Assembly (NCBI GenBank): GCA_002269645.1
Contig: NIVC01002283.1
Coordinates: 123,112-187,111 of the forward strand
DNA from: Macrostomum lignano
Lineage: Eukaryota
Direction: 5' to 3'
DNA: 64,000 bases
Position 1 is the first letter of the stretch, and each line of letters opens with the position of its first letter. The translations under genes were made by a program, and so were the position numbers. Of this stretch, positions 9,995 to 63,764 are shown piece after piece. The notes below the pieces were generated by a model. That model saw only the letters and a program-made list of their open reading frames with translations. It did not search any database and had not been told where the DNA came from.

Positions 9995-11290
9995 ATTAGA
10001 TTTCCACCTGAGAGTCTGATCTAAGATTTCCACCTGAGAGTCTGATCTAAGATTTCCACCTGAGAGTCTGATCTAAGATTTCCACCTGAGAGTCTCATCT
10101 TAGATTCCCACCTGAGAGTCTGATCTAAGATTTCCACCTGAGAGTCTCATCTAAGATTTCCACCTGAGAGTCTCATCTTAGATTCCCACCTGAGAGTCTC
10201 ATCTAAGATTTCCACCTGAGAGTCTGATCTAAGATTTCCACCTGAGAGTCTCATCTTAGATTCCCAATTGAGAGTCTCATCTTAGATTCCCACCTGAGAG
10301 TCTCATCTTAGATTCCCACCTGAGAGTCTCATCTTAGATTCCCAACTGAGAGTCTCATCTTAGATTCCCACCTGAGAGTCTCATCTTAGATTCCCACCTG
10401 AGAGTCTCATCTTAGATTCCCACCTGAGAGTCTCATCTTAGATTCCCAACTGAGAGTCTCATCTTAGATTCCCACCTGAGAGTCTCATCTAAGATTTCCA
10501 CCTGAGAGTCTGATCTAAGATTTCCACCTGAGAGTCTCATCTTAGATTCCCAATTGAGAGTCTCATCTTAGATTCCCACCTGAGAGTCTCATCTTAGATT
10601 CCCACCTGAGAGTCTCATCTTAGATTCCCAACTGAGAGTCTCATCTTAGATTCCCACCTGAGAGTCTCATCTTAGATTTCCACCTGAGAGTCTCATCTTA
10701 GATTCCCACCTGAGAGTCTGATCTAAGATTTCCACCTGAGAGTCTCATCTAAGATTTCCACCTGAGAGTCTCATCTTAGATTCCCACCTGAGAGTCTCAT
10801 CTAAGATTTCCACCTGAGAGTCTGATCTAAGATTTCCACCTGAGAGTCTCATCTTAGATTCCCAATTGAGAGTCTCATCTTAGATTCCCACCTGAGAGTC
10901 TCATCTTAGATTCCCACCTGAGAGTCTCATCTTAGATTCCCAACTGAGAGTCTCATCTTAGATTCCCACCTGAGAGTCTCATCTTAGATTCCCACCTGAG
11001 AGTCTCATCTTAGATTCCCACCTGAGAGTCTCATCTTAGATTCCCAACTGAGAGTCTCATCTTAGATTCCAACCTGAGAGTCTCATCTTAGATTCCCAAC
11101 TGAGAGTCTCATCTTAGATTCCCAACTGAGAGTCTCATCTTAGATTCCCACCTGAGAGTCTCATCTTAGATTCTTAACTGAGAGTCTCATCTTAGATTCC
11201 CACCTGAGAGTCTCATCTTAGATTCCCAATTGAGAGTCTCATCTTAGATTCCCACCTGAGAGTCTCATCTTAGATTCCCAACTGAGAGTT
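9995..11290. repeat. Minisatellite, 26-bp unit (tcttagattcccacctgagagtctca), with two variant types and higher-order structure
   Basis: About 50 copies; marker variant cccaattgag recurs at ~10263, 10550, 10861 and 11226. Confidence 0.97.
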
Positions 11291-28659: not shown

Positions 28660-29840
28660 CACTGTCACCCCCTGTCTCTCACTGTAGCACTCTCTGTCTG
28701 TACCACTGTCACCCCCTGTCTCTCACTGTAGCACTCTCTGTCTGTACCACTGTCACCCTGTCTCTCACTGTAGCACTCTCTGTCTGTACCACTGTCACCC
28801 TGTCTCTCACTGTAGCACTCTCTGTCTGTACCACTGTCACCCTGTCTCTCACTGTAGCACTCTCTGTCTGTACCACTGTCACCCTGTCTCTCTCACTGTA
28901 GCACTCTCTGTCTGTACCACTGTCACCCCTGTCTCTCACTGTAGCACTCTCTGTCTGTACCACTGTCACCCCTGTCTCTCACTGTAGCACTCTCTGTCTG
29001 TACCGCTGTCACCCCTGTCTCTCTCACTGTAGCACTCTCTGTCTGTACCGCTGTCACCCCCTGTCTCTCACTGTAGCACTCTCTGTCTGTACCACTGTCA
29101 CCCCTGTCTCTCACTGTAGCACTCTCTGTCTGTACCACTGTCACCCCCTGTCTCTCACTGTAGCACTCTCTGTCTGTACCACTGTCACCCCTGTCTCTCA
29201 CTGTAGCACTCTCTGTCTGTACCACTGTCACCCCCTGTCTCTCACTGTAACACTCTCTGTCTGTACCACTGTCACCCCTGTCTCTCACTGTAGCACTCTC
29301 TGTCTGTACCACTGTCACCCCTGTCTCTCACTGTAGCACTCTCTGTCTGTACCACTGTCACCCCTGTCTCTCTCACTGTAGCACTCTCTGTCTGTACCAC
29401 TGTCACCCCTGTCTCTCACTGTAGCACTCTCTGTCTGTACCACTGTCACCCCTGTCTCTCACTGTAGCACTCTCTGTCTGTACCGCTGTCACCCCTGTCT
29501 CTCTCACTGTAGCACTCTCTGTCTGTACCACTGTCACCCTGTCTCTCACTGTAGCACTCTCTGTCTGTACCACTGTCACCCCTGTCTCTCACTGTAGCAC
29601 TCTCTGTCTGTACCACTGTCACCCCTGTCTCTCACTGTAGCACTCTCTGTCTGTACCTCTGTCACCCCCTGTCTCTCTCACTGTAGCACTCTCTGTCTGT
29701 ACCAACCACTGTCACCCCTGTCTCTCACTGTAGCACTCTCTGTCTGTACCACTGTCACCTTCTGTCTCTCTCACTGTAGCACTCTTTGTCTGTACCGCTG
29801 TCACCCCTGTCTCTCACTGTAGCACTCTCTGTCTGTACCA
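28660..29840. repeat. Minisatellite, 42-45-bp unit (ctgtcacccctgtctctcactgtagcactctctgtctgtacca)
   Basis: Visible tandem copies. Confidence 0.97.
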
Positions 29841-29859
29841 CTGTAACCCCCTGTCTCTA

Positions 29860-30160
29860 TCACTGCCCAACTCCCTGTCTCTTTCACTGTCACCCCTCTG
29901 TCTCTTTCACTGCCCAACTCCCTGTCTCTATCACTGTCACCCTCCCTGTCTCTTTCACTGTCACCCTCCCTGTCTCTATCACTGTCACCCTCCCTGTCTC
30001 TTTCACTGTCACCCTCCCTGTCTCTATCACTGTCACCCTCCCTGTCTCTTTCACTGTCACCCTCCCTGTCTCTTTCACTGTCACCCTCCCTGTCTCTCTC
30101 AATGTCACCCTCACTGTCTCTATCACTGTCACCCTCCCTGTCTCCATCCGTTACTCTCTC
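29860..30160. repeat. Minisatellite, 24-bp unit (tcactgtcaccctccctgtctctt), related to the adjacent 43-bp unit
   Basis: Period 24 (29941, 29965...); shares cactgtcaccc..ctgtctct with the left neighbour. Confidence 0.93.
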
Positions 30161-34000: not shown

Positions 34001-37000
34001 ACCCGCTGATCTCCGGCTTCACAATGGGCGTCGCGATTCACGTGTTCTCCAGCCAGATCAAATACGTTCTTGGAATTAAAGTGCCCAGGCGAAACGGCGT
34101 GTTCAGCCTGCCTCTGGTGAGCTGGGATCTTTCTTGTCATCAATCAACTTAGTCCAATGCTCTCAAGCTGAAGCAGCAATCAGTTTCCTCTCCTGGGGAC
34201 CAAAGTGCAGGCCAGCCAAGCAGATGTGTTAATCAAACTTTCTCTCCCCATCTGGCTGCCCTTATCTGCCCGGAAAATCCCAGTTCCAACTCAGGGCGCC
34301 GTTTCGCATCCAGAGCGGCGCGAGTTATGAAGTTAATGGAAGTTCTCCATCATCGCATACCCGCCGGGATTGGAGTCTGGACAGAATTAGACCCGGATCT
34401 GAGAGGTTCGCCCCACCCAGTAATGCATTGCCTGTCGTGCAATAGCAGCAGAAACCTAATAAGATTTTATTAAGATGATTACATACACCTGATGGTCTCG
34501 AGTAGTGCAACGGTGTTAATAACAGTGAATCAGTCGGACGTGTTCTCGAGTACTCTTCAATGCGATAACTTTCTTCCAAAAAATTGCAGCACTATTTTGA
34601 TCTGCTGCGCAACATCACGGAGACAAACTTCGTTACGGTGGGCATAGCAGTTGTCTCCATAGTGATCCTGTACGGCACCAAGGAGTTTGTGAATCCCAAG
34701 GTTAGGAAACGGATCAAAGCACCTCTACCAATCGAACTGCTCATTGTGAGTACCATTTTAAAAAAAATTATATCTACTCCATAACAATGTCAGTCAAGTG
34801 AGCCATTGTCATTCATATTTTTCATTTTAGGTTAGCCTAGGCACCATACTTTCCTACTTCCTGGATTTAAAGAAAAATTACAATGTCCAGATTGTCGGCA
34901 CAATACCCACTGGGTGAGTTTCAGGCCTTCCACGCGTCTTTTAGGGGAGTTCAATGAAGTCCTACCGCCTGGGCATGGATCGTAATTGATTTATTTGATA
35001 TACTGTAGAACTACTGAATGAAGTCTGCTGTTACAGTACCCTACTGCTCCTTTTCCCTTCAGCGACTGCTGCCCCTCCCCTCAGATCCTTCAGCGACTGC
35101 TGCCCCTCCCCTCAGATCCTTCAGTGCCTGCTGCCCCTCCCCTCAGATCCTTCAGTGCCTGCTGCCCCTCCCCTCAGATCCTTCAGCGACTGCTGCCCCT
35201 CCCCTCAAATCCTTCAGTGGATGCTGCCCCTCCCCTCAGATCCTTCAGTGGCTGCTGCCCCTCCCCTCAGATCCTTCAGCGACTGCTGCCCCTCCCCTCA
35301 GATCCTTCAGTGCCTGCTGCCCCTCCCCTCAGATCCTTCAGCGACTGCTGCCCCTCCCCTCAGATCCTTCAGCGACTGCTGCCCCTCCCCTCAAATCCTT
35401 CAGTGGCTGCTGCCCCTCCCCTCAGATCCTTCAGTGGCTGCTGCCCCTCCCCTCAGATCCTTCAGTGGCTGCTGCCCCTCCCCTCAGATCCTTCAGTGGC
35501 TGCTGCCCCTCCCCTCAGATCCTTCAGTGGCTGCTGCCCCTCCCCTCAGATCCTTCAGTGGCTGCTGCCCCTCCCCTCAGATCCTTCAGTGGCTGCTGCC
35601 GCTCCCCTCAGATTTTCAGTGGCTGCTGTAATTTCACCAAGCATCTGTAATAAAGGCAATCACCTACTGTACCTCGCAGCCAGCATTTTCAACTATTCAT
35701 ATTAGTTCCTGCAATCATTTATTTAATTATGTGCCCCAAACAGAATTCCACCGCCAGAGCTGCCGGACTTCAGCATCCTTCGAGCCTCAATGGCCATTGA
35801 AATTGTCACCATCGCCATCATAGCCTTCTCAGTTTGCGTCTCGCTAGCTAAGATATTCGGCAAGAAGCACAATTATGAAGTTGCGCCAAGTCAGGTAAGA
35901 CTAAATTTAATTTTAGTACTACGTGATAGTGATTTAGAAATCAGCCAGCAGAATACCAAGTTAAACCAAAACTTACTTGCATCGGAGTCTAAATTGACTT
36001 TCTAGTTGCACAAGTAAAAAGCAGTTTTCCTTCATTCAACAGGAGCTCATTGCCTACGGAATCTGCAACACGGTCGGCTCCTTCTTCCATTGCTGGCCAG
36101 CTGGCACCTCATTGTCGCGTTCGGCTGTTCAAGACAGCATGGGCGGCAAGACCCAGGTGGCGGCCCTGTTCTCGTCCACTCTGCTGCTTCTAGTGCTGCT
36201 GTTTATTGGGAAATATTTCGAATCGGTACCGAACTGTTGCCTTTCCGCCATCATCATTGTTGCGATCAAAGGGATGCTGGAACAGGCCAAGGAGGCGCCA
36301 GTACTCTGGCGCCTGTCACCCTACGATTTCTGGACCTGGATTGTGGCCTGTCTGGGCGTCGTGTTCCTGGCAGTGGATTACGGCCTAATCCTCGGGCTGG
36401 CCTTCTCTGTCTGCAGCATCATTGTTAGAACTCAGTCGCCCACTTCTTCTATGCTGGGTCACATACCGGACACGGATCTGTACAAGAACGTCCTAGCATA
36501 CGATGACGTGAGCAAAGGGTCTTTGGGTTGGCCTGCTGAGATAATAGCTGGAGTGAAGATTAGGCTTCCGTTTTTAAGCGTTGTTTTCGTTTCTGGTTTA
36601 GTCAATGATGTGACTCACAGATAAGACCTATGCACAGTTTGTGTGAAGCCGTGAGCCGTGTGAAGTTTTTAACGCTGAAATTTTGGTTCATTTGTGGACG
36701 TCTGCGTTCCAGAGAGTCGATCAGATAGTCTAAGTTCTAGTCATCAACTTTTCTGATATTCTGCTCATTCCTGATGACGGACAGTATCTGGCATTTAGAT
36801 TGTTGAATAGAGTTAACAGTAAGCTATAAAAAGTTAGGGTCGAAGTCATACGGATGAGGTGTTAGGTAATATTGAGGGAATTTGGGGTTGTTTAGCTACA
36901 GTTTTTTGCTGCATTTCTATTTCAATTTCATCTCAACAATGTCCCTCCCTAACAAAGATCGAATTGGTCGACGGCGTTAAAATCTTTCGCTACGAGGGCT

Positions 37001-38406
37001 CGTTGTACTTTGCTTGCGCCGAGAACTTTCGCGACAGTCTGTACCACAAGAGCGGCGTGCATCCGCGCAAGATGCTGCTGGCCAGACGCAAACTCACAGA
37101 AAAGTACGCTAAACTGGCGGCTAAGAAGCTGCAAAAATCGCCGGAGGTGTTGAAGAAAGAATTTTCTAAACTGACCGACTCTGAACGATCCGAGGCTCTG
37201 AAAGAATTTGGCCTTCAGTGGCCTCCAGTGCCGGTGGATCACGTGATTTTGGACGCCTCCACCTGGGGCTACATTGACTACGTCGGCGTGCGAGCTTTGA
37301 ATCAGACAATTCAGGAATACAAGGAGGTCGGCATTCGAGTGTACTTGGCGAATCCGAAATGTGAGATTTTTCTAGAAATATGAGTTTTTCAATGATTAGC
37401 CTAGGATATTGAAGACGTATCAGGCTTGACTATGCTAAAACAGGATTTTAACCAAATTCTCGATCCTTAACCGTAACTTTTTAGCCCTTGTCGGTCACGC
37501 CATCTACACTGTAGACGTCAAATTGAAATTAACCCAAAATCTATTCAATTGAATCACATTGTGTTGTTCGCGTGCGGTCATCTAGTATTCAATTCTATTG
37601 TAGAACGCGTTTGCTTTATTATAATACTGACTCCAGCTCGTTGACTTCTGCTTTGAATATTCTTTTTGAGATAGAGTCACGCCCGTATCCTGTTGGCCTA
37701 ATTCAAGGATATAAAAATTGTTAAACTCCTGGTGCTCCTGCAGCGATCCATTCCCAGCAAGACAGGCAACGAAACTCACAAGTCCTCTCCTGCTATCCTT
37801 GCCACCTAGATGCACCTAAAAGCTCGTTATAGTAGGCATGTTGTCAGATACTTACATAAGCGCACTGTCTGTGAATCCTCGGCCTTGACTTTCTCATTGG
37901 CAGACAGTATTGATTGCACGAACCCATAACAAATAAACATCATGCAAAAGCATACAGACGCACCACAGAAACGGAAACTTTGGTGCCAAGATCAGATCAG
38001 ATCAGGAGGGGCTACCGTTCTGTCTACCTGACCTACCTGATGACTACCATGAACAACCGTAGACATACATGTACGGTAGTCATTAATTGCAGCTTTTGCT
38101 CAAGTGTGTAAAAAATGCCATTTACCGAATTAACCAATCATCACAGGCGGCATTCGAGCCTGTCTGCAGCGCTCCGATTTCTACGAGAAGAACGAACCGG
38201 ACATTATCTACGTCTCCGTGCACGACGCTGTCCTTGCCGCGCAGTGTGAACAGAGGGAGGCCGCCGCCAAAGGCGGTGACACTCGCGCCGTCGCTGCTGT
38301 ACAAGCCGCCAACTTGTCTGTCAATCAACCGGCTGCTGATGACGATGGCGCCGGTGAAGCTGCAATCGAAACTAGTGCAGAAGATAACGCTGATTTAAAG
38401 GCATAA
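31006..38406 (+). CDS. SLC26 anion transporter (prestin/SLC26A5-like) with STAS domain; exons 31006-31060, 31327-31851, 33081-33478, 33952-34116, 34590-34745, 34831-34913, 35744-35894, 36043-36507, 36958-37360, 38147-38406
   Basis: Family motifs WLLADFISGLTVGIMHIPQGMAYA, GLYTSFFP, YLSDPLISGFT, P.ELLIV, QELIAYG, SLSRS, GKTQVA, KIFRYEGSLYFA, YIDYVG and SVHDAV. All nine GT-AG introns are phase-consistent. The exact orthologue cannot be determined. Confidence 0.92.
31925..32125. repeat. Short minisatellite, ~42-bp unit (ctctgacacccgattgtcctaatgcgaggcctgattgataac), SLC26 intron 2
   Basis: About five degenerate copies. Confidence 0.85.
33740..33835 (-). mobile_element. Diverged SINE family B fragment (SLC26 intron 3)
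   Basis: gccatgtacactctgtctgccttgggggttagccctca resembles gcatgtacacttcactgtgccttgggggttgaccttca of 21215-21458. Confidence 0.45.
35050..35630. repeat. Minisatellite, 31-bp unit (ctgctgcccctcccctcagatccttcagtgg), SLC26 intron 6
   Basis: Visible tandem copies. Confidence 0.97.
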
Positions 38407-40972: not shown

Positions 40973-42048
40973 AGTGGCGCCCCTGTCCCTAATGGTGGGC
41001 ACACCTGTCCCAAATGGTGGCGCCCCTGTCTCAAATGGTGGCGCCCCTGTCCCTAATAGAGGCACCCCTGTCCCAATGGTGGTGCCCCTGTTCCTAACGG
41101 TGGTTCCCTATCCCTAATGGTGGCGCCCCTGTCCCTAATAGAGGCGCCCCTGTTCCTAATGTTGGCTCCCCTGTCCCTAATGTTGGCTCCCCTGTCCCTA
41201 ATGGTGGCGCCCCTGTCCCTAATAGTGGCGCCCCTGTCCCTAATGGTGGGGCCCTGTCCCTAATGGTGGCGCCCCTGTTCCTAACGGTGGTTCCCTATCC
41301 CTAATGGTGGCGCCCCTGTCCCTAATAGAGGCGCCCCTGTTCCTAATGTTGGCTCCCCTGTCCCTAATGTTGGCTCCCCTGTCCCTAATGGTGGCGCCCC
41401 TGTCCCTAATAGTGGCGCCCCTGTCCCTAATGGTGCAGGCGCCCCTGTCCCTAATAGAGGCGCCCCTGTCTCTAATGGTGGGGCTCCTGTCCCGAATGCA
41501 TGGTGAGCACCCCTGTCCCTAATGGTGGCGCCCCTGTTCCTAATGGTGGCGCCCCTGTCCCTAATGGTGGCGCCTCTGTCCCTAATGGTGACGCCCCTGT
41601 CCCTAATGGTGACGCCCCTGTTCCTAACGGTGGTTCCCTATCCCTAATGGTGGCGCCCCTGTCCCTAATAGAGGCGCCCCTGTCCCTAATGTTGGCTCCC
41701 CTGTCCCTAATAGTGGCGCCCCTGTTCCTAATGTTGGCTCCCCTGTCCCTAATGGTGGCGCCCCTGTCCCTAATAGTGGCGCCCCTGTCCCTAATGGTGC
41801 AGGCGCCACTGTCCCTAATAGAGGCGCCCCTGTCTCTAATGGTGGGGCTCCTGTCCCGAATGCATGGTGAGCACCCCTGTCCCTAATGGTGGCGCGCCCC
41901 TGTTTCTAATGGTGGCGCCCCTGTCCGAATGGTGGCGCCCGTGTCCCCAATGGTGGCGCCCCTGTCCCAATGGTGGCGCCCCTGTCCCAATGGTGGCGCC
42001 CCTGTCCCCAATGGTGGCGCCCCTGTTCCTAATGGTGACACCCCTGTC
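40973..42048. repeat. Minisatellite, 21-22-bp unit (ggtggcgcccctgtccctaat)
   Basis: Visible tandem copies with internal block duplications. Confidence 0.96.
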
Positions 42049-42624
42049 GCTAAACTGAGTTTCAAAAGGCCAGATTTTGCCGCCCTCACGGTCTAAACTA
42101 GAAATTGACAAGTAACATCAGTCAGTCGAAATTTTACATCAAAGAATGAAGAGTTTCAATATATTGTTTACATATTCAAGACATACTTGAGATTCAAATC
42201 CCAGCTACAGTTGAAATTATATTATTTATTGTAATTTGTAACCATATAGGAGCAAACATAGGATTATAAACTAACAAATAGAAAGGAAATTTGCTTGAGT
42301 TGCGAAGCCTAGACTGGTTTTAGTTCTATTCGAAGTTGAACGATTAAAATGCAAGTCAGGCATGAAAGTTAAACTTTGCCTGCATTTCAATTATCTCTGG
42401 ATATATATATATATATATACCGATTGTATACATGGGGCTTTGGCCTATTAATTAATGCGAAGATTCAGCTAACCTGCTAAGAATTCAAAGCATATCATAT
42501 TTTCGATTATGATCTTTTTTACACTGTACTTGCATCTTGCATGCACGTCTGGTAAAATCAAGAGTAAGGAAATGCGAGATTGGAATTTCAAGACAGAAGA
42601 TTTAAAAATACAAGCAGGAACAAA

Positions 42625-44799: not shown

Positions 44800-46256
<1,457 letters not shown>

Positions 46257-47799: not shown

Positions 47800-50260
47800 G
47801 CACATCAAACAAACAATTCAGTTTTCAGTCCAGTGGCATCATCACCGCCGTGAAGCACAGCGACTGGGCTGCGCGGATCGTGCCGGTCGTCAAGAAGGAC
47901 GGCAGCGTTCGGATTTGCGGGGACTACACAAGCTGACGACCTACAACGCGGTGAGCAAGCCGGAGCACTACCCGCTGCCTCGCATCGAGGACCTCTTCGC
48001 CAAGCTCGGCGGCGGCTTCAAGTGGACCAAGCTCGAACTGTCCAACACCTTGCAGCACCCGCGCTGGCCGACGACAGAAAGGCGTTTCTCACCATCAACA
48101 CGTCTAAAGGCCTCTTCCAGGTCAATCGCCTCCCATTCGGTATCACGAGCGCCAGCGCGATCTTTCAACGCACCCTGGACACCCTTCTGGGAGAATTGGA
48201 CGCCGTCCAAATCTTCGTCGAAGACAGTCTGGTCACCGGCAGCACAATGGAACAGCACAAGAGGAACCTGGCGCTGGTCCTGCGGCGCTTTAAGGACCCC
48301 GGCCTACGACTCAACAAGGAGAAATGCAAATTCTTCGAGGACTCTGTTGAGTACCTCAGCCATCGGATCGATGCCAGCGGACTCAAGCCGCTGCCGGATC
48401 GGGTCACCGCCGTCCAGGACGCGCCAGCACCCAAGGACGTCAGCCAGCTGCACTCGTTTCTGGGCATGCTAGCGCAGTACTGCAAGTTCCTGCCCAACTT
48501 GTCTGGCGCCGCTCCACCAGCTCTTGGCCAAGAACACTCGCTGGTCATGGGGGCCACCGCAGCAACAGGCATTCGCAGAGGCCAAGCGGCTGCTGCTCGA
48601 GTCCACGGTTGTCGTGCACTACAATCCAAATCTGCCGCTGCTGGGTCTGCTGGGCGAGCGCAAGGGCATCCCGGCACACGCGGCCGCCCGGATGCAGCGC
48701 TGAGCCATTTGGCTGTCGAGCTACGACTACACGCTGGAGTTCAGGCCGACCGAAACGCATGCAAATTGCGACTCGCTCTCGCGACTGCCGCTTTCGCACC
48801 TGTTCGAGGAGGAGGCGGCCGTCAACTCACTGCTGCTCGACGAGGGCTCTGGGTCGGCCATCACGGCGCTGGCGGCGGCGCGGCACACTAGGACGGACGC
48901 CTCACTCGGTCGGGTGCTTCGCTGCTTGCAAACTAGCGCGCCCATCGGCGCTAACCTGAGCAACTTCGCCTGGCGGCCAACCGGTCGACCAAGATTGTGT
49001 CCTGTGGAGCGCAAAGGTCGTCGTGCCGACCGCGCTGCGTCAACACGTGATCCAAGAGTTACATCAGGCGCATCCCGGCATCAGCAGAATGCGCGCCCTG
49101 GCTCACAGCTACGTGTGGTGGCCCGGCCTTGGCTTCGGCCTTGGCAGGACTTGGCCGGTAGCCGTGGCCAAGTCCTGCCGCAACTGTCAGCTCAACCAGC
49201 CCGACCCGCCCAAGGCACGGTGCAACCGTGTCCTCTGCCGTCCGAGCCATGGGAGCGCCTGCACATCGACTTTGCCAGTCCGGTCGACGGTCACACGTAC
49301 CTGTGGTGGTCGATGCTCATAGCAAGTGGCCGGAGGTCCAGCGGATGCGCGTTACAACGTCGGCGGCCACCATCGCGGCGCTGCAGGATATGTTCGCGCG
49401 CCAAGGCATTCCACGCACCGTGGTGTCCGACAACGGGTCGCAGTTCGCCTCCGCTGAGTTCGCCGAGCTCACCCGGGCTAACGGCATTCGTCACGTGTTC
49501 TCGGCGCCGTTTCATCCCGCCACCAACGGCCAGGCCGAGAGCTTTGTGCAAGACCTGAAGCGACATCTACTCAAGAGCGGCCACTCCGACGTTGAGCTTC
49601 AGTGACTGCTGCTCAGCTATTGCAACTCTCCACACAGCATCAGCGGCGTTGCCCCGAGTCAGCTGCTCATCGACCGTCGGCTTCGCTGCCGCCTGGACCT
49701 CTTGGCACCGTCGCTGACCGATGACGTTCAACGACGGCAGGAGCGACAGCTGCAGGAACGCAGACCGGCGCGCGAGTTTCAGCTGGGTGATCACGTCCTC
49801 CTCCGCGACTACAGCGCCGGCGCGATAGCCGGTGACATGCCACGCTGGGCTGAGGGCGTCGTCACGGGCGCCGGCAGCCGCAACTACACGGTTGACTCGG
49901 AGCGTGGCCAGCACTTCCGGCACACTGATCAGCTGGTGGCAGCCCGCGCTGACTCCGCTGACACCGTCCATCCGCCGCCTGCTACGGATGACGGCGCCGC
50001 CCCGAGTGACAGTGGCGTGCGAAGCGCTGACACCGAAACCCCCGCCGTCACGGCCAGCGAGGGGGCGTCCGGCACTGACGTCGAGCCTACGAGCGGTGTG
50101 CGACTCGAGCCTGGCACTTCTCGGCGGTAACCCTGAGGGTTCGAGGCCCACCTCAGAGACTACAGCTGTGAAGGGGGGAACTGACTCAGGGGGGGGGGGA
50201 GTGTGACATTGTGGTGTTATGCAATTGAATAAAGCAAGTTTGAAAAAAATCGGTTCAGGC
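47800..50260 (+). mobile_element. Decayed Ty3/Gypsy LTR retrotransposon: RT, partial RNase H, integrase, PPT and start of 3' LTR
   Basis: [45 protein letters not shown]; YxDD degraded to FVED; HPGISRM..WWPG; PWERLHIDFA; VSDNGSQF; HPATNGQAE. Many frameshifts. Polypurine tract 50188-50201 is followed by TGTG. Confidence 0.92.
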
Positions 50261-52965: not shown

Positions 52966-53680
52966 TGCCTCAGAAGAAATTTGAAATTGTTCTCCGTCTA
53001 ATTCACTGTTGAGAATTAAGTGGGCTCAGCCTCATGAATAATAGATATCACTTGCTTTCCATGAATAGCGTGAGCTAGCTCCATGACAACGGATTTTCCT
53101 GCTATTGAAGTGGCAAACAGAAGTAGTGAAGAATTGGGACTGAAGAGAGAAAGTGAGAGAGATTCAGTGTGGTAGAGGTATGTAAAACTAGGCTCAGCAA
53201 TGGGCTCTTGGAGAGTAAAATTTCTGGTTCTCAAGCTGACTGAAAGCTCCCAGCAAAGATGTGTGTACTGCTTAAAAGGAATTGAATTCTAGTTCAAATT
53301 TGCAGAAGGTAAAGCGCACTGCTCCCATTGTCTAGCAGAGTCAACTTACCCTCAAATAGTCCATACTATAGCTTTGCGAATTGCGATCCAGAAATTCGAT
53401 GAAGCTAACCCTCTCCGCACTGAACCTTCTTGTTTACCGAACCTGTTCGGCGGGAAAAGCTTTCATTAAATAAAGTCTGCTCGTGATGGTGCTTCTAGCT
53501 CAGACTTTAGCGACGCTGAATTCCTTTAAGCTTAAGAAACTCACCTTGAATCGATCTTATTGGCTGTGGAGAAGTATATTTGAGTGTCGAAATGCAATAT
53601 TAAAGGCATTCACTACCTTAGAATTGATACTTGTCACGCGAGCTGCATCGACTGACTCTACCCGCAATTGTTTCACTAAA

Positions 53681-54984
53681 ATGTTGCAGCTCAGAAAATT
53701 ATTGCTTTTTGTTGCCATCGCAACCCAGCTGACCAGCTGCTACTCCAAGATGCCTAAGCAAGATTTCGAGGCGGCTTTGCTGAAGTATCTGAAAAACAAC
53801 ATCACGGACTACAGCCCGACTCTGCTACCAGCCTTGGACAGTCAGTCAGTGAGCGTCTACTTGTCCACCTCGATAGGTCAGATTGTGAGTGTGGACAGCG
53901 CCAAGCAGAGCATTAAAATTACTGCCCTGATATTTGCAACTTGGTATGAGGAAAGACTGGTCTGGGATCCTAAAGAGTTTGGCAACATCACCGTGATAGA
54001 TTGGGAGATCGGCAGAATCTACTTCCCCGTGATATTTTTGTGCACTGGCATTGGAGAAAACCAGCTTCTGAGTCCACAGTTCCCACCCTACATCACATCC
54101 GTGGCACCAGAAAGTCAGTGGTATCAGCCATCTGGAGGCGTGAGTGGGAGTTCTCCTGCGAATTCGACATGCGTCGGTTTCCGTTCGATCGGCACACCTG
54201 CGACTTGGAGCTGTCCGCTAACGACCAGGGGCGGGGAAAAGGACAACCTGCTGTAAAAAAGGGCAGCCTTCAGTACGGCCCATCAGTGGAATTCAATGAA
54301 GTGGGGGCCTATGTTAGGAACAGCGAATGGAATCTGCTGAACTTGAGCACGTTCGTGCGCAACAAAAAGTATGAAGTTTTCAAAGGACAACCGAAAATGC
54401 CGCTGCCGACCTACGTGGTACAACTGGAGATCGAGCGGGTGTCCACTTACTACATGCTCAACGTGGTGACTCCCCTGCTGCTGCTCACACTGCTCCAGGT
54501 GCTCGTCTTCTTCGTGCCAGTCGAGTCTGGAGAGAAGCTGAGCTTCGGCATCACCATCATGCTGAGCTACACGGTGTTCCTGCTGCTGCTGGACGGCCTG
54601 CTGCCCAAGTCGCAGTCGATGCCGGCCGTGGCGTCGTTCATCACGGCGGCCATGGTGCTGTCGACGACGTCTCTGCTGCTCACGGCGGTGGCGATTCGGT
54701 TCCACTTCGCTGCGGAGTCTCAGCCGATGCCGTCGTGTCTCCGGTTCGTGTTCGTGTGCTGCCTGGGCCGAGCGCTGCTGTGCGGTGAGCGACGAGGGGG
54801 CGTCAGGACGGTGCCAGAAGGAGACAGCGATGACTCCGCGGTGAGCAAGGCGAGCGATGACGGCGAGAGGCGCTCGGACTGGAAAACAGCTTCAACCGCC
54901 GTGGAGCGGCTTATGGCCGTTATGGGTTGTGTGGCGATTTTCACCATTTTGTTCGCGTTCCTGGTTTGGCCCTTCCTCGAATAG
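53681..54984 (+). CDS. Intronless Cys-loop ligand-gated cation channel subunit (nAChR-like, non-alpha) with one -1 frameshift near 54101
   Basis: Signal peptide MLQLRKLLLFVAIATQLTSCYS; W.EERLVWDP; Cys-loop CEFDMRRFPFDRHTC; M1-M4 with GEK linker. ORFs 53483..54256 and 54001..54984 join if one base is added at tcc g^t ggc, giving YITSDG. Either pseudogene or sequencing error. Confidence 0.85.
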
Positions 54985-58750: not shown

Positions 58751-61700
58751 TTAAATGGCATCGTAATCATCCAGGTCCGCATCTGATTCCATCAGTGCCA
58801 TCAAAGCACTTGCGTCTTCTTGAGACACCTGCGGCTGCAGTGTTACCGGCTGCTCATCAGCTGGCTTTGGTCTCTGAGCCGACTGCTGTTTCGGTGACTG
58901 CAGTTTCACCCGCGAAGGTGTCGTCTCCATTAGAGTGCCACGAGTATCATCGATTCGAGCTTCACCAACTGCCCAGCTTCCGGTTGCCGCGGCTTCCGCC
59001 GCAGCCGCAGCCGCAGCTTTATTGTTCTTGGCCAGCTCCTCTTTGATCATCTCGCGCAGCCTCGCCAGGAGTTCGTCTTTTTCATCCTCCTCCTTTGGCG
59101 AACTGCTAGCCATGAATTTCTCGCGATTGTTGCGCAGACTGAATGCCTGGTAGAGCAGAAACTGCAGCACCAGTTCCTTGTCCAGCTCTTTCTTTTCGTC
59201 AGAGCTTTGTTGAGGTGCACCCCGCGACTCGCGACGATAACTTCTCCAGTTCCGACCCAGAACTCGCCTGAAAATGTCAAATATGTTGAATGGCGGTGGC
59301 AGGCAGGAACGCGTCTGGAACTCTTCGATGAGTTCGTGACGCTCGAACTGCCAAAGCGCTTTGCTCCTCGAGTCAATCTCTTCGATTGTTCTGCTGAATA
59401 GCGCAATTATCAGGTTTAGCAGAAGGATCTCCGTGATGATCACGTACAACGGCATGACGAGATTCGGCACCAGATATCTTGGGAGGTAGTTGGTTGTTTT
59501 GCGAATGATTGATTGGGAAAATTACTTATAAGTTGTCGTGGGGATTGCCGAAAATGGTAGAACTATTATAGTGCCACAGAAATCCCACTTGGATAGTCAC
59601 TGTAAAGCTTCACGTTAACTTAGAGCAGTTTTTCTTAAATTAAATAAATAATCTTACTAGCATACATGAACGGGTCAATACTAGGTACTCGTGGATGCAC
59701 TTGAAGCATTTTGATTATTTTAGGGTTCAATACTTCTAATGATTGGATTCCTGAAGTGACCTACCGGCCAAATTGATGCGGGCACGACTTCCCATTCTTA
59801 GTCTTATTATTGTAGATGTCGTCGCATTCCGAGTCGCCTTCAATGAGATCCAGACTGTACTCGCCGACCATGCTGTAGAAGCAGATCCGAAACATGGCAA
59901 CCAAAACCTCGCTGGTGGTCATCTTGTCCGAGTTCCAAGCGTAGTACCCGTTCGGAAACAACAGGCCGTGAATCAGCACGCCGAAGCCAAGTATGAAGAT
60001 GAACAGAATGAACAAGAAAGGCATCATGTCCTTGATAATCATTGTAGCTATCATTTTCAGCTTGGGTCCAAGCTCCTCGAGAACGGTTGAAATGTACAAC
60101 AGACGAACCCAGTAGAGCATGCAGGACGTGCCTAGTGTGAGGATTGAAAAAACGAAAATTAAAAGGGCCTGTCAACTTAAGGACTATTAAGGACTATTAT
60201 GCCAACATAAGCTTATAAAGTAGAGTCCCTAATTATCGCCTTGCTTGTTCTGCCCTATCCCAAGTCCAATTTTCGTAGCTTTTTTGCCAAACCCAGCTTC
60301 CTAGTGTCATTGTGAGCAGAATGACATCATTTGTCTACATAGGTTACTCGAGCTTCACTATATGACCTTTAGTTGACAGGCCCTTTAAAGAATTATGTCA
60401 TATTATACTTCTGGATAGCTCCTTTGGGAGTGACGTGAACTTAGGAGTGACGTCTTTTATGAAGAAAAACGTGAGTCTTCGCTGGGAATCAACTTAGGTT
60501 CGACTTAGAGTGAAATAATGAGGGTAATTTACATGTACATAACTTTCTATGGGACATAAATCTTTAAATTATGTGGAGTAGTTCTGCAAGGGATATGGCA
60601 ACTTGAGTTGACTTAACAAACTTAGGAGCATTAGTTCTGCTGGTATAAAATCTAAGTAAAGTATCAAAAAGCTTACCGAGGAAGAGTCTAGCGTTGTACC
60701 AAAGTGTATCGTCAAAGGCCATCGCTAAAGACCTTTCATGGGTGGGAATCGATCTGTCGTATCGAGAGATTCGCAGTGCAAAACCTATCACCGCAGATAA
60801 AAGGGCCAATAGGTCGATAAGGTTCCATTTGCTCGAAAAGAAATCAGATATTGTCTCGTGCAGCAGTAGATACTGTACAAACTCCGCAAGCTCCTCCATC
60901 AGAAATCCAAATATGATCGTGTAGGCGATTACCTCAGGCGCGCTGAGTTCGTAATCGAACTCCAGCAGAACAATGTAAGACAACAAAAGTAGCAAAATTA
61001 TGTGCGAAATTGCGTGGTATCGAAATTTTACGGCTGGTATGCGGTAGAAGCCGTACAGCAGGCTGAACAGCAGACGGATGTACTCCCAGCTAAAGATGGA
61101 CGGACCATCTGGCGAATAACTGCTTGCTGTCTCTTCGTTTTCTGTTTCTTTGGTTACAAATTCTGGCATTGAATTAAGTGTCGTCATTGATTGGCTCAAT
61201 TGTTCTCGAGATCGTACTAGTGGCCTCAGCTCGGAGGAACGAGTGCGTCTGGCCATCACAGGTGTGGGATTATTTTCTTGAGCACTTCTCATCGATTCCG
61301 GCAGGAGGAAATCGCATGATGGATTGCCGGATGTCTTTGCGCTATCTTTCTGAAAGAGTTCTGCGTTTTTGTCCAACTTGTTTGCCTTTTCCGTGTACTT
61401 CTTTCCAGATAGAGTAGTATAACTGGGATGAATAAGTTCAGCGGTATGAGACCAAGCCAGATTAGCACTTCACGGACGTAGGTGTTGATGTGAAGTAGGA
61501 AACCGAACCAGCTCTTGTTCAAGGCCTCCTGGCCTGCTTCAGTCTGCAGGAACTTCGAGGAACTGTTTCTAGCAGCAAGCTGAATGCAAGTGATGTCGCC
61601 ATATGAGGGCAATCTAAGAAGAAGATAGTCAACAGTTGTCTGCTTGTTGAACGAAGTGTCCAACTGATACACGTTCTTTACAATCTGCGCAGCAAACAAC

Positions 61701-63764
61701 TCACAGGTGCTTGCTAGTTGCTCCATTTCTGCGGCGTCCACCGACATACTTGGGATTGTTGCGAATGCCCGAAGCACACTAGCGCAGTAGAGACCAAGTG
61801 GCACAACGTCAAACTTTTCCTGACGCAGAAGGATTTCCGTTAGCTTGAAGCGGCCAGTAAAAATCGACCACATGACCAGAGTGTCCATGGGGTGACGCAT
61901 ATAGTCTGACTGTGCTTGAAACTCTACCTCGCGGTAGGCGCGAAGTTTGAAATTGGCGCATTTTTGTCCGTAAAACCGAGTAAACGCTTCCCTGTCCAGC
62001 CGGTGATCGGATATGAAGTTATTCGTCAAGTGGGATACGATTCCATTGTTGCCTCGGTTTGGCGTATGAACATACAGCTCATCGATGTGCTCCTCTATGT
62101 GAGCTCGAATTTCAAACCAAATAAGACCGCAGTTCATAATTCGCTCGAGCATCACACTGTCCTCTCTAAAGAGAACATAGCGAACGATATTTGAGCAAGT
62201 CTTCAGTAAGACATCCTTATTTCCTGGATCTAGAAGAACATGAATTGCTTCTGTTTGAAGAAGCTTCAGCACGACGTCTTTGAACTCGATGAGGTCTATC
62301 TTGTCGTCTTTTTCTAGCTTTGAGAGCAGCTCGGCCTCCTCATCCCTGGATAGCTCATCGTATTTTATCTGGCACAATTGGAACTCATTGTCGACAGCAT
62401 CTAGAAAGTTGAGGTACTGCTGAAACTGTGGGTCTTGGAAAAGTTCGCTAAATGACCGCGCCTCGCTTTTTGTCATCTCCTGAGTGAAGAAGTAGGCGAG
62501 ATCGCTCATGAGAACAACGCTGCCGAGACCCAAGACCTGTCAATCACCGTCTTCTTGCTGTCCGACTGGATATCAACAAATGCGCCATTGTTGAGAAGCA
62601 TGGCCGTGATATTGCGGTTCTGGTTGATCACGGCAATGTGCAGGGCCGTTTTGCCTTCGTATCCCTTTAGGTTGATGACATCCTGGCTGCAGTACTCAAG
62701 AAGCGTCTTCACATGAATAGTTGAATCTTCAAGGCAAGCTCGGTGCAGAGGGCTGTTGCCCTGACGGTCACTCACGTCAACGTCAGCCTTACAAATTCCT
62801 GAAAGTAAAGAAAATACTCTATGCACTCTCATAAAGGTAGTATTGAATAGTTCTTAACCAATATGAAATATAGTTTGCTTACTTAAAAGACAAGAGAGAA
62901 CGTCGTTGGTTTGAAACCCACACGCTCTGTGCAGAGGGTACTCCCCGCTTGGCAGAGGAATGTTCGGGTTGGCGCCCAAGGCAACCAGTTTTCTCATGAC
63001 TCGAGTCTGCTGGCTCTCCACGGCGTAGTGCAGAGGCACGTAATTTCCCGGATTTTTCTTGTTGAAATCTACGCCTCTGTTGTGCAGAATGTCCAGCACG
63101 TGCAAGTGACCATCAGCAGCTGCTATGTCAGCCAGGGTTTGGTGACATTTATGGCATTCGTAGAGGTTCGAGCCTGTCAACATGGACTCGAGCTTATTGA
63201 GCTCACCATTGTAGTATGCTTGCATGAGTGGCGTCATTATCACATCATCTTTCTTCTTTATCGATGGCGATATGCTCGGCGCAATGATCAAGTTGCGAAA
63301 GAATCCAGGCGGCCGATTAGTTCGGACCTCCCGGACAGGTCTCGAATTTCGGCGCCTTTGAAGAGCAGAATAGTCGCGACCGGTGTCGATAGAGTCGCCG
63401 GTGTTGGACGAAGCCGATTCGAATCTCTGCCTGCGCAGCTGTTTCAGCTCTTGTCGTCGATATTGTACATGCCGGCGCGTCGAACCGCTGACGACGTCGT
63501 CGGAATCGTTAATCCGTATCGAAATTCTGGTACCAGGAGGCTTTTTGCTATCCATCGCTGCCGGTGTCTTCGGTAGTTGCTCCTGTCGGAGCTGCTGTTC
63601 TTCACTGAATTGCTGATGTTGCTGCAGTGCTGCTGCTGCTCGTGCTGCTGTTGAGCCAATGAATATTGCTTAGGCAGCAGAGGTCGATGACGAACGCTTG
63701 AATGCCTGGCGGCAATACCCGTGTTTGTCGCTGCGTCCTTTGTCACTGGCCGGTGCCCCGGCAT
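58751..63764 (-). CDS. Ankyrin-repeat-containing TRPM-like cation channel; exons 63764-62883, 62798-60677, 60131-59765, 59477-58751; three -1 frameshifts (~63628, ~62536, ~61403); ~1366 aa if corrected
   Basis: Ankyrin repeats (NYVPLHYAV, EYPLHRAC, GNSPLHRAC, GKTALHIAV); TRPM pre-S1 region (TLVMWSIF, LLLRLPSYGDITCIQLA, KFLQTEAGQEALNKSW); S1-S6 (PAVKF, SKWNLIDL, LGPKLKMI, ILLLNLIIALFS); TRP box WQFER and LPPPFNI. Introns are GT-AG and phase-consistent. Confidence 0.87.
60164..60384. mobile_element. Kolobok-type MITE in a TRP intron
   Basis: TIRs aaagggcctgtcaactta / tttagttgacaggcccttt. TTAA-type flanks at 60159-60163 and 60385-60388 (ttaaaggg...ccctttaa signature). Confidence 0.65.

What the first reader, a model, noticed from the sequence alone, without database searches (positions are those of the whole stretch)
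58751..63764. Hybrid TRP channel: N-terminal ankyrin repeats fused to a TRPM-type body
Seen: at least four clear ankyrin repeats precede a TRPM-like pre-S1/S1-S6/TRP-box (WQFER) region, and there is no C-terminal NUDIX or kinase domain. Known: canonical TRPM channels have MHR1-4 and no ankyrins, while ankyrins define TRPA/C/N/V. From recollection (unverified), parasitic flatworms have an ankyrin-bearing TRPM clade of anthelmintic interest. Inference: this may be a free-living representative of a poorly characterised ankyrin-TRPM subfamily.
Basis: partly seen in the sequence, partly recalled or inferred. Interest (0 to 1): 0.72.

Follow-up and report, generated by a model that had tools for sequence, protein, structure and literature searches.

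The report
Flatworm ankyrin-TRPM channel gene (TRPM-MCLZ type)
This is a Macrostomum lignano gene for a cation channel with ankyrin repeats in place of the usual TRPM N-terminal domain; it is a free-living relative of the parasite channel hit by the anthelmintic meclonazepam, so it is a real but already recognised kind of protein.

Summary
On the minus strand (58751-63764) lies a four-exon gene. It encodes five to six ankyrin repeats, a TRPM-type MHR3/4 region, S1-S6, and a TRP helix (WQFER...LPPPF). It has no SLOG/MHR1-2, NUDIX or kinase domain.

The window comes from the free-living flatworm Macrostomum lignano. An allele that is 99% identical in GenBank (BOX15_Mlig030565g1, 1365 aa, "hypothetical protein") is intact with the same exons. 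The window copy differs from it by five small indels. Three of them change the frame.

A profile search of 1.84 billion proteins and a tree place the channel body in a flatworm-only clade (bootstrap 88). Every full-length member of that clade has N-terminal ankyrin repeats and no SLOG. The parasite members match the published residue pattern of TRPM-MCLZ, the schistosome meclonazepam target, which is already described as ankyrin-bearing and "TRPM-like".

M. lignano has at least ten divergent paralogues, where the literature treats the parasite gene as a single orthologue per species.

I file it as a new member of a known kind, of moderate interest. It could serve as a tractable free-living model for an anthelmintic target family. 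Whether the window copy is a null allele or carries assembly errors cannot be decided without reads.

The parts
58751..63764 (-). Whole coding region of the ankyrin-TRPM-like channel gene. It is an allele or homeologue of M. lignano BOX15_Mlig030565g1, with the stop codon TAA at 58751-58753.
   Evidence: P0001 shows 100% BLASTP identity and coverage. DNA is 98-99% identical to NIVC01003499.1.
62883..63764 (-). Exon 1: N-terminal low-complexity region plus the ankyrin cap and repeats 1-3a. There is an alternative in-frame start, ATG at 63555 (Met70 of P0001). Three indels lie upstream of it, at 63753 (-1), 63726 (+1) and 63629 (+2, in a CAG run).
62799..62882 (-). Intron 1 (84 nt, GT...AG, phase 1), located inside ankyrin repeat 3.
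60677..62798 (-). Exon 2: ankyrin repeats 3b-5, a helical linker, the MHR3/4-like domain, pre-S1, a disordered loop and S1-S3, all in one exon.
62539..63249 (-). Ankyrin repeat domain: cap plus five repeats (P0001 aa 172-380).
   Evidence: Pfam hits. phmmer with a consensus repeat. AF2 helix pairs with pLDDT above 90.
62539..62540 (-). 1-nt deletion relative to the intact allele (GA[T]CAG). It shifts the frame and gives a stop at 62506-62508 (last coding base 62509) if real.
61404..61405 (-). 1-nt deletion in an A4 run (GGAAAAGAAG to GGAAAGAAG). This is the second frame change inside exon 2.
61547..62035 (-). TRPM2-like (MHR3/4) domain match (PF25508 profile positions 96-255; P0001 aa 549-711).
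   Evidence: hhalign against canonical flatworm TRPMs gives probability 99.5% for aa ~501-764.
60132..60676 (-). Intron 2 (545 nt). It contains a 24-nt inverted-repeat pair and a 98-nt insertion that is absent from the other allele.
59765..60131 (-). Exon 3: S4 (YWVRLLY), the S4-S5 linker (LGPKLKMI), S5, and the pore helix and filter (FYSMVGEYSLD).
59478..59764 (-). Intron 3 (287 nt).
58751..59477 (-). Exon 4: S6, the TRP helix (LWQFERHELIEEF), TRP box 2 (LPPPFNIF), and a helical, Ala-rich, acidic C-terminal tail. No NUDIX or kinase domain.

Best explanation
The locus encodes a subunit of a tetrameric, TRPM-derived non-selective cation channel. It belongs to the flatworm-specific ankyrin-bearing lineage whose parasite member is TRPM-MCLZ.

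**Architecture (shown).**
- Five to six ankyrin repeats.
- A helical linker of about 125 aa with no detectable SLOG homology.
- A TRPM MHR3/4 domain and pre-S1.
- A disordered loop of about 70-95 aa, depending on whether it is bounded by the low-confidence part of the model or by the conserved flanking motifs.
- The S1-S4 voltage-sensor-like domain and the S5-pore-S6 module.
- The TRP helix and a C-terminal helical tail.
- The ankyrin domain stands where MHR1/2 (SLOG) sits in canonical TRPMs.

**How it most likely works (inferred).**
- It opens when a small ligand occupies the S1-S4/TRP cavity. Four of the six published meclonazepam-contacting residues are identical (H889, H893, E930, R1011). 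The other two are Tyr to Phe (F926, F1177).
- Cytosolic Ca2+ probably acts as a co-factor. The TRPM Ca2+ site is kept in four of five positions: E in S2, N and D in S3, E in the TRP helix, with the S2 Gln replaced by Glu.
- It probably conducts Ca2+ and other cations through a V-G-E filter, resembling the F-G-E filter of divalent-permeable TRPMs.
- The S4 'gatekeeper' residue is Tyr (Y1014). This is the variant linked to low meclonazepam sensitivity in Asian schistosomes and Fasciola, so weak sensitivity to that drug is predicted.

**State of the window copy.** As written it is broken by frame-changing indels. Because pN/pS against the intact allele is 0.10, these are more likely assembly errors or a very recent null allele than an old pseudogene.
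For: **Organism and allele**
- Identity to M. lignano P0001 and its contig.
- The exon model reproduces P0001 exactly.

**Domains**
- Pfam results.
- No SLOG: Pfam, hhalign.

**TRPM affinity of the body**
- The best 60 of 174 solved-structure sequence matches are all TRPM, with nvTRPM2 at 5.5e-48.
- 2181 library hits, with canonical TRPMs following the clade.

**Clade**
- NJ tree of 289 columns and 140 sequences: 33-member clade with bootstrap 88.
- Within it, the Macrostomum expansion has bootstrap 99 and the trematode plus cestode group has bootstrap 100.
- Ankyrin repeats occur in every full-length member.

**Link to TRPM-MCLZ**
- The residue identities and spacing H-4-H-33-Y-4-E-75-R-3-[Y/F] in Dicrocoelium, Fasciolopsis and Schistocephalus proteins equal the published Sm.TRPM-MCLZ numbering 827/831/864/868/943/946 (PMC10788528; PMC12861061).
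- The cestode-specific variants L826F, D893E, H946F, R1120K and T1121S are reproduced in P0130 and P0142, with I892L in P0142 only.
- The Opisthorchis gene model shows the published duplicated exon 3.

**Structure**
- AF2 model with pLDDT 83.2 and pTM 0.65.
- Foldseek returns NOMPC plus 49 TRPM chains.

**Selection**
- 9 synonymous against 3 non-synonymous differences, pN/pS 0.10.
Against: - The S. mansoni TRPM-MCLZ sequence itself was not available. The link rests on published residue numbers and on parasite orthologues, not on a direct alignment.
- The tree is distance-based (NJ, Kimura distances). It contains only the 150 best hits plus some members of their clusters, and no TRPS, TRPC or TRPN sequences.
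- No expression, electrophysiology or ligand data exist for any M. lignano member.
- As it stands, the window copy cannot make the full protein. From Met70 it terminates after the ankyrin domain.
- The ion selectivity, Ca2+ dependence and drug sensitivity statements are inferences from a few aligned residues.
Confidence: 0.85

Rival explanations
1. The window copy is a genuine pseudogene or null allele of the channel gene. This would be one of the redundant copies in the recently duplicated M. lignano genome, not an assembly error.
For: - There are five indel differences within 4.1 kb of CDS.
- Two of them (63753 and 62539) are not in homopolymer runs.
- From either start codon the reading frame ends early.
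- M. lignano carries many near-identical gene copies, named g1/g2/g3.
Against: - Substitutions show strong purifying selection (pN/pS 0.10).
- One indel is in an A4 run and one is in a CAG repeat, both typical long-read error contexts.
- The indels sum to zero, so both CDS are 4098 nt long.
- No premature stop arises from a base substitution.
Confidence: 0.3
2. The protein is a gene-prediction chimera. On this reading, an ankyrin-repeat gene and a separate N-terminally truncated TRPM gene lie side by side and are wrongly joined.
For: Some database models of relatives are split into separate ankyrin and Ion_trans pieces, for example Schistocephalus VDL94592-94594.
Against: - Ankyrin repeats 3b-5 and S1-S3 share one continuous exon, with an open frame in the intact allele.
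- The same architecture recurs in at least ten M. lignano paralogues and in trematodes and cestodes.
- Sm.TRPM-MCLZ with this architecture was cloned from cDNA and is functional (PMC10788528).
- AF2 models the ankyrin-linker-MHR junction with pLDDT of roughly 75-90.
Confidence: 0.02
3. The lineage is not a derived TRPM. It is a separate, old TRP family that kept the ancestral ankyrin repeats, which TRPM and TRPS lost.
For: - Himmel et al. 2020 infer that ankyrin repeats were lost before the TRPM-TRPS split and did not sample Platyhelminthes (PMC7306681).
- Rohr et al. 2026 place TRPM-MCLZ 'next to' the other TRPMs and call it 'TRPM-like' (PMC12861061).
- In my tree the position of the clade relative to other TRPMs has bootstrap 35 or below.
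Against: - All named members are flatworms.
- The clade's weakly supported nearest neighbours are other flatworm TRPMs.
- It keeps the TRPM-specific MHR3/4 domain and a TRPM-type TRP box 2 (LPPPF).
- Flatworm TRPMs exist with ankyrin repeats in front of an intact SLOG domain (P0145, P0152). That fits a secondary gain of ankyrins followed by loss of SLOG.
Confidence: 0.1
4. The channel body belongs to an ankyrin-type TRP family (TRPA, TRPN, TRPC or TRPV), and the TRPM-like motifs are convergent.
For: Foldseek ranks Drosophila NOMPC first by E-value for the whole-chain model.
Against: - The NOMPC match has the lowest query-normalised TM-score among the top 50 (TMq 0.34, rmsd 26 A) and is driven by the ankyrin repeats. 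TRPM chains give TMq 0.37-0.48.
- The sequence profile of the body hits only TRPMs in the top 60 solved-structure matches.
- The body profile does not hit an ankyrin-rich TRP at E<=10.
- PF25508 is present.
Confidence: 0.02

Closest known systems
TRPM-MCLZ (Schistosoma mansoni Smp_333650, UniProt A0A5K4FCC0) and its trematode, cestode and monogenean orthologues
   Same: - Both have N-terminal ankyrin repeats in place of MHR1/2-SLOG, a TRPM-type MHR3/4, S1-S6 and a TRP helix, and neither has NUDIX or a kinase domain.
- They are similar in size (1365 against 1380 aa) and both have few exons.
- The VSLD pocket has H, H, E and R identical and two Tyr to Phe changes.
- They share a clade in the S1-TRP tree (bootstrap 88).
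   Different: - The window gene comes from a free-living macrostomid.
- It is one of at least ten divergent paralogue groups, whereas the TRPM-MCLZ literature treats the parasite gene as one orthologue per species.
- It has four exons rather than three.
- The pore helix and filter keep the canonical TRPM 'GEYSLD' form, while the parasite orthologues have a 3-residue deletion there.
- The S2 Ca2+-site Gln is Glu.
- No functional data exist for it.
Canonical TRPM channels (e.g. Nematostella TRPM2, PDB 6co7; TRPM3; TRPM4)
   Same: - It shares MHR3/4, pre-S1, S1-S6, the S4-S5 'LGPK' motif, a TRP box 1 of the W-x-F-x-R type, and TRP box 2 'PPP'.
- It shares the Ca2+-site residues in S3 and the TRP helix.
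- E-values against solved TRPM sequences reach 5.5e-48.
   Different: - It lacks the family-defining SLOG/MHR1-2 domain and has sequence-canonical ankyrin repeats instead.
- Sequence identity is only about 20%.
Flatworm Ank-SLOG-TRPM proteins (M. lignano Mlig003066, P0145; Clonorchis sinensis KAG5447154, P0152)
   Same: They are flatworm TRPMs with N-terminal ankyrin repeats, and they sit in the weakly supported neighbourhood of the clade.
   Different: They retain LSDAT_euk/SLOG and a full-length PF25508 domain, are much longer (about 1700-1780 aa), and lack the S1 H-x3-H motif.
TRPN/NOMPC and TRPA1
   Same: They have an N-terminal ankyrin repeat domain on a six-TM TRP channel. NOMPC is the top Foldseek hit by E-value.
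   Different: They have 14-29 or more repeats rather than about 5. Their channel bodies are not detectably similar at the sequence-profile level, and they have no MHR3/4.

Membership tests
TRPM (canonical) | N-terminal SLOG / MHR1-2 domain (Pfam LSDAT_euk) | tested here: not met
   There is no LSDAT_euk hit in P0001-P0003 at E<=0.01, whereas P0145 and P0152 hit it at 1e-22. hhalign of the post-ankyrin region against canonical N-termini finds no SLOG match (second hit probability 0.1%).
TRPM (canonical) | MHR3/4 (TRPM2-like domain, PF25508) | tested here: met
   PF25508 scores 45.8-48.1 bits against a cut-off of 27, covering profile positions 96-255 of 257. hhalign probability is 99.5% over 251 columns.
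TRPM (canonical) | S1-S6 and TRP domain closest to TRPMs | tested here: met
   The top 60 solved-structure sequence hits are all TRPM. The non-clade library hits I looked up by name are TRPMs. The sequence shows the WQFER and LPPPF motifs.
TRPM (canonical) | C-terminal coiled coil that holds the tetramer | not tested
   The tail has a helix-prone stretch (DELLARLREMIKEELAKNNK, 59033-59077), but it was outside the modelled segment and no multimer was predicted.
TRPM-MCLZ-type ankyrin TRPM-like channels of flatworms | N-terminal ankyrin repeats replacing MHR1/2-SLOG (PMC11731825, PMC12861061) | tested here: met
TRPM-MCLZ-type ankyrin TRPM-like channels of flatworms | Groups with parasite TRPM-MCLZ orthologues in a tree of the channel body | tested here: met
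   The NJ clade of 33 has bootstrap 88. The parasite members were identified as TRPM-MCLZ orthologues by the published residue pattern and the exon-3 duplication. Caveats: the Sm sequence is not in the tree, and the method is distance-based.
TRPM-MCLZ-type ankyrin TRPM-like channels of flatworms | Conserved VSLD pocket residues (Sm H827, H831, Y864, E868, R943, Y1117) | tested here: inconclusive
   In the window protein these are H889, H893, F926, E930, R1011 and F1177. Four are identical and two are Tyr to Phe. Phe at the 1117 position also occurs in Gyrodactylus orthologues. The spacing S2 to S4 is 81 rather than 75.
TRPM-MCLZ-type ankyrin TRPM-like channels of flatworms | Activation by (S)-meclonazepam | not testable with these tools
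   The S4 gatekeeper is Tyr (Y1014), the low-sensitivity variant, so weak or no activation is predicted (PMC10788528, PMC12861061).
TRPS (soromelastatin, ced-11-like) | SLOG plus C-terminal Nudix domains; no ankyrin repeats (PMC7306681) | tested here: not met
   There is no SLOG and no NUDIX hit, and ankyrin repeats are present.
TRPS (soromelastatin, ced-11-like) | Groups with ced-11-like sequences; divergent TRP box 2 | not tested
TRP box 2 here is the TRPM-like LPPPF.
Ankyrin-type TRPs (TRPA/TRPN/TRPC/TRPV) | Channel body homologous to those families | tested here: not met
   The body profile does not match the ankyrin-rich TRP P0019 at E<=10. There are no TRPC, TRPV, TRPA or TRPN entries in the top 60 solved-structure hits. 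NOMPC matches only at TMq 0.34.

The most novel reading that the evidence does not exclude
The ankyrin-TRPM-like lineage arose in the flatworm stem in two steps. First, ankyrin repeats were added in front of SLOG; such Ank-SLOG-TRPM proteins still exist in Macrostomum and Clonorchis. Second, SLOG was lost. The lineage then radiated into at least ten functionally distinct channels in free-living macrostomids and was reduced to a single gene in parasites. That would make M. lignano a natural library of TRPM-MCLZ-type ligand pockets, and it would be a documented counter-example to the rule that TRPM and TRPS channels are ankyrin-free.
Probability: 0.35. Interest if true: 0.55.

Novelty: new member of a known kind. 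Interest (0 to 1): 0.35.

Why it matters
TRPM-MCLZ is a validated anthelmintic target whose endogenous activator and physiological role are unknown. Parasites are hard to manipulate genetically.

M. lignano is a free-living flatworm that can be made transgenic. It carries an expanded set of channels with the same unusual ankyrin-for-SLOG architecture and a largely conserved ligand pocket. That opens three lines of work in a laboratory model:
- asking what the ankyrin domain does in a TRPM scaffold;
- asking what opens these channels;
- asking how pocket variation shapes drug sensitivity.

For TRP evolution, it adds free-living data to a lineage that breaks the textbook statement that TRPMs lack ankyrin repeats. 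The gene itself is already in GenBank as a hypothetical protein and the architecture is published for parasites, so the finding is incremental.

Tried and rejected
- **Tiny introns.** I first considered that the two internal frame changes were introns of 16-57 nt, with GT...AG candidates at 62536 and 61393. I rejected this because the intact allele reads straight through both sites, and the difference is a single missing base at each.
- **Whole-protein word search.** It was swamped by generic ankyrin proteins.
- **Body-only word searches.** They found only three Macrostomum proteins and seven flatworm proteins. Only the exhaustive HMMER profile search reached the wider family.
- **Retrieving S. 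mansoni TRPM-MCLZ.** The last word-based search, with the Dicrocoelium body as query, did not return any Schistosoma protein. Supplementary files of the two key papers are not held.
- **S4 mapping.** I first placed Sm R943/H946 on 'LRISRYD', which is the end of S3. I corrected this to the true S4, 'YWVRLLY', using the published spacing.
- **TRP-helix mapping.** I first placed Sm Y1117 on the 'ERH' position. I corrected it to the 'EEF' position using the published R1120/T1121 neighbours and the cestode K/S variants.
- **Source of the Logan relatives.** A look-up for P0129 gave only a run accession (DRR639838), so the organism remains unknown.

Full report
**1. What is in the sequence**

The minus strand between 58751 and 63764 carries a set of long ORF pieces. 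I joined them at three canonical GT-AG introns: 62882-62799 (84 nt), 60676-60132 (545 nt) and 59764-59478 (287 nt). The joined pieces give one protein.

Pfam results on the pieces are as follows:
- The two N-terminal pieces match ankyrin repeat families at E 1e-11 to 1e-13.
- The 414-aa piece matches the TRPM2-like domain PF25508 at 2e-12.
- The next two pieces match Ion_trans.

Read by eye, the ankyrin domain has an N-terminal cap and five canonical repeats (window 62539-63249). The TRP helix reads LWQFERHELIEEF and is followed by LPPPFNIF (59279-59359). No NUDIX, alpha-kinase or SLOG domain is found.

**2. Organism, allele and the 'indels'**

A protein search returned a 1365-aa GenBank protein, BOX15_Mlig030565g1 of the free-living flatworm Macrostomum lignano. 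It is named 'hypothetical protein' and covers the whole model at about 100% identity (P0001).

Its contig (NIVC01003499.1, fetched as L001) is 98-99% identical to the window across the aligned blocks. My four-exon model applied to L001 reproduces P0001 residue for residue. The exons are 880, 2124, 367 and 727 nt.

The window CDS differs from L001 by five indels:

| Window position | Change | Context |
|---|---|---|
| 63753 | -1 | not a homopolymer |
| 63726 | +1 | A run |
| 63629 | +2 | CAG run |
| 62539 | -1 | GA[T]CAG |
| 61404 | -1 | A4 to A3 |

- The first two compensate each other within nine codons.
- From the upstream ATG (63764) the window frame stops at about 63447.
- From Met70 (63555) the frame stops just after the ankyrin domain, at about 62509.

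The substitutions tell a different story. There are 9 synonymous and 3 non-synonymous differences, giving pN/pS of 0.10. I conclude that the copy was under purifying selection until very recently. The indels are either assembly errors or a young null allele. Reads are needed to decide.

**3. Are the ankyrin repeats and the channel one protein?**

Yes, as far as sequence can show.
- In the intact allele, exon 2 is a single open frame from ankyrin repeat 3 through the MHR-like domain to S3.
- The same architecture recurs in every full-length relative.
- The schistosome relative with this architecture was cloned from cDNA and gives currents (PMC10788528).

**4. What family is the channel body?**

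I built a profile of the non-ankyrin body from the three closest paralogues (alignment A1).

*Solved structures.* The profile matches 174 distinct solved-structure sequences. The 60 best are all TRPMs, led by Nematostella TRPM2 at 5.5e-48, followed by TRPM3, 1, 2, 8, 4, 5 and 7.

*Protein library.* An exhaustive HMMER search of 1.84 billion representative proteins gave 2181 hits at E<=0.001. The ranking falls into three tiers:
- Seven proteins at 381-646 bits. Six are Macrostomum paralogues and one is the Opisthorchis protein.
- Then trematode and cestode proteins.
- Then canonical TRPMs of many phyla. The ten I looked up by name were all TRPMs, nine by annotation and one by its SLOG domain.

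*Negative control.* A bona fide ankyrin-rich TRP with Ion_trans (P0019, Actinia) is not matched by the body profile even at E<=10.

*The region after the ankyrin domain.* Profile-profile alignment of this region against N-termini of canonical flatworm and other TRPMs gives the following:
- P0001 aa ~501-764 aligns to the MHR3/4 and pre-S1 region with probability 99.5%.
- There is no match to SLOG.
- The first ~125 residues after the ankyrin domain have no counterpart.

*Structure.* An AlphaFold2 model of aa 165-1215 is confident, with mean pLDDT 83.2 and pTM 0.65. It shows, in order:
- paired ankyrin helices;
- a helical linker;
- the MHR-like helical domain;
- a disordered loop (model residues 619-692);
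- a TRP-channel transmembrane module with a TRP helix.

Foldseek against the PDB puts NOMPC first by E-value, but with the lowest query-normalised TM-score in the list (0.34). It is followed by 49 TRPM chains with TMq 0.37-0.48. This is the structural signature of an ankyrin-plus-TRPM hybrid.

**5. The clade**

I aligned the S1-to-TRP region of 140 hits to the profile (289 columns) and built a neighbour-joining tree with 100 bootstraps.
- The window protein lies in a clade of 33 sequences (bootstrap 88).
- One part is a Macrostomum-only expansion of 18 sequences (bootstrap 99).
- The other part is a group of 14 (bootstrap 80). It holds Opisthorchis, Dicrocoelium, a trematode cluster that includes a Fasciolopsis protein, Schistocephalus and some unnamed sequences.
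- Twenty-five of the 33 have detectable N-terminal ankyrin repeats. The other eight are N-terminally truncated fragments or split models.
- None of the members I scanned has SLOG.
- At 50% identity the Macrostomum members fall into at least ten groups: Mlig030565, 019746, P0003, 012389, 023207, 008432/029514, 033956/026745, 022043/007691, 004154 and 000356.

**6. Link to the known family**

The literature describes schistosome TRPM-MCLZ (Smp_333650, 1380 aa, three exons), the target of meclonazepam.
- It lacks MHR1/2-SLOG and has N-terminal ankyrin repeats (PMC11731825).
- It has 'multiple ankyrin-like repeats' (PMC10788528).
- It is described as 'TRPM-like' because of the ankyrin domains (PMC12861061).

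I could not obtain the S. mansoni sequence. The published pocket residues (H827, H831, Y864, E868, R943, H946) imply spacings of 4, 33, 4, 75 and 3. Three observations tie the parasite members of my clade to TRPM-MCLZ:
- The Dicrocoelium, Fasciolopsis and Schistocephalus proteins show exactly H, H, Y, E, R and then Y or F at these spacings.
- The published cestode variants L826F, D893E, H946F, R1120K and T1121S are seen in the cestode sequences, with I892L in P0142 only.
- The Opisthorchis model contains two tandem channel bodies, which matches the published duplicated exon 3.

The parasite members of my clade are therefore TRPM-MCLZ orthologues.

The window protein (P0001 numbering) compares with Sm.TRPM-MCLZ as follows:

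| Sm.TRPM-MCLZ residue | Window protein | Status |
|---|---|---|
| H827 | H889 | identical |
| H831 | H893 | identical |
| Y864 | F926 | Tyr to Phe |
| E868 | E930 | identical |
| R943 | R1011 | identical |
| H946 | Y1014 | low-sensitivity variant |
| Y1117 | F1177 | Tyr to Phe |
| R1120 | R1180 | identical |
| T1121 | S1181 | differs (cestode-like) |

A supplementary BLAST table of another paper shows that Smp_333650 has strong planarian hits (E of about 1e-145 to 1e-150). Free-living homologues are thus implicit in published data. I found no paper that discusses them.

**7. Likely mechanism (inferred)**

- *Ca2+ site.* Compared with nvTRPM2 in the printed alignment, the TRPM Ca2+ site is retained except for Gln to Glu in S2. 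The retained residues are the S2 Glu, the S3 Asn and Asp, and the TRP-helix Glu.
- *Filter.* The filter reads V-G-E, followed by YSLD. This is close to the F/Y-G-E of divalent-permeable TRPMs. The parasite orthologues have a three-residue deletion there.
- *Proposal.* I propose a tetrameric, Ca2+-permeable, non-selective cation channel. It would be gated by an unknown ligand in the S1-S4/TRP cavity, with Ca2+ as co-factor. The ankyrin domain would take the place of SLOG at the periphery of the cytosolic ring.
- *Drug sensitivity.* Tyr at the S4 gatekeeper position predicts poor meclonazepam sensitivity (PMC10788528; PMC12861061).

None of this has been tested.

**8. Novelty and verdict**

The architecture and the lineage are known from parasites. 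This particular gene is deposited but uncharacterised. The macrostomid expansion and the pocket comparison appear not to have been described in the literature I could search. I therefore rate it a new member of a known kind, with interest 0.35.

The main open points are:
- whether the window copy is truly broken;
- where the lineage attaches within or beside TRPM (support in my tree is weak);
- whether the Ank-SLOG-TRPM proteins of Macrostomum and Clonorchis mark the route by which the ankyrin domain was acquired.

Noticed in passing
Related proteins P0145 (M. lignano Mlig003066) and P0152 (Clonorchis sinensis KAG5447154): These flatworm TRPMs carry ankyrin repeats (Ank_2, 32.9 bits) N-terminal to an intact SLOG (LSDAT_euk) domain, a full PF25508 domain and Ion_trans. 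This Ank-SLOG-TRPM architecture could be the intermediate on the way to the SLOG-less TRPM-MCLZ type.
   Followed up: partly
Window 60159-60182 / 60366-60389 and 60343-60440 (intron 2 of the gene): There is a 24-nt inverted-repeat pair, 92% complementary and 183 nt apart. The window also has a 98-nt insertion, absent from the other allele, that carries one arm. It may be a small mobile-element footprint.
   Followed up: partly
Window 58751-63764: The five CDS indels relative to the intact allele sum to zero (-1, +1, +2, -1, -1), so both CDS are 4098 nt long. This may be chance, or it may be a by-product of consensus polishing.
   Followed up: no
Related protein P0126 (Opisthorchis viverrini T265_12782): The database gene model contains two tandem channel bodies (aa 414-991 and 1145-1675). 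This corresponds to the duplicated, alternatively used exon 3a/3b reported for Opisthorchis, Clonorchis and Paragonimus TRPM-MCLZ (PMC12861061).
   Followed up: yes
Window 53483-54984 (+): The nearest protein-coding ORFs at least 150 aa long, about 4 kb away on the opposite strand, belong to a Cys-loop ligand-gated ion channel (Neur_chan_LBD plus Neur_chan_memb). It is split over two overlapping reading frames, which means either a short intron or another frame-shifting indel.
   Followed up: partly
Window 1-43117 (many sites, e.g. 9971-11289, 22879-24476, 28660-30144, 40974-42053): There are about 25 minisatellite arrays with 18-43 bp units and up to 70 copies. They generate long spurious ORFs in several frames.
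   Followed up: no
Window 2919-4163 (+), 12510-13928 (-), 36112-37383 (+), 45006-46256 (+), 48022-48891 (+): Other coding pieces in the window are an enolase C-terminal domain, an Hsp70-like protein, an SLC26 sulfate permease with STAS, an alpha-tubulin (lacking its first ~35 codons in this ORF) and a reverse-transcriptase fragment.
   Followed up: partly
Locus L002 (Logan run DRR639838, contig 5415, 1298-4516): This is an intron-less 1072-aa Ank-TRPM-like relative (P0129) from an unidentified sample. It lacks the S1 His-x3-His motif (Tyr-x3-Tyr instead). Its organism is unknown, so restriction of the lineage to flatworms is not proven.
   Followed up: partly
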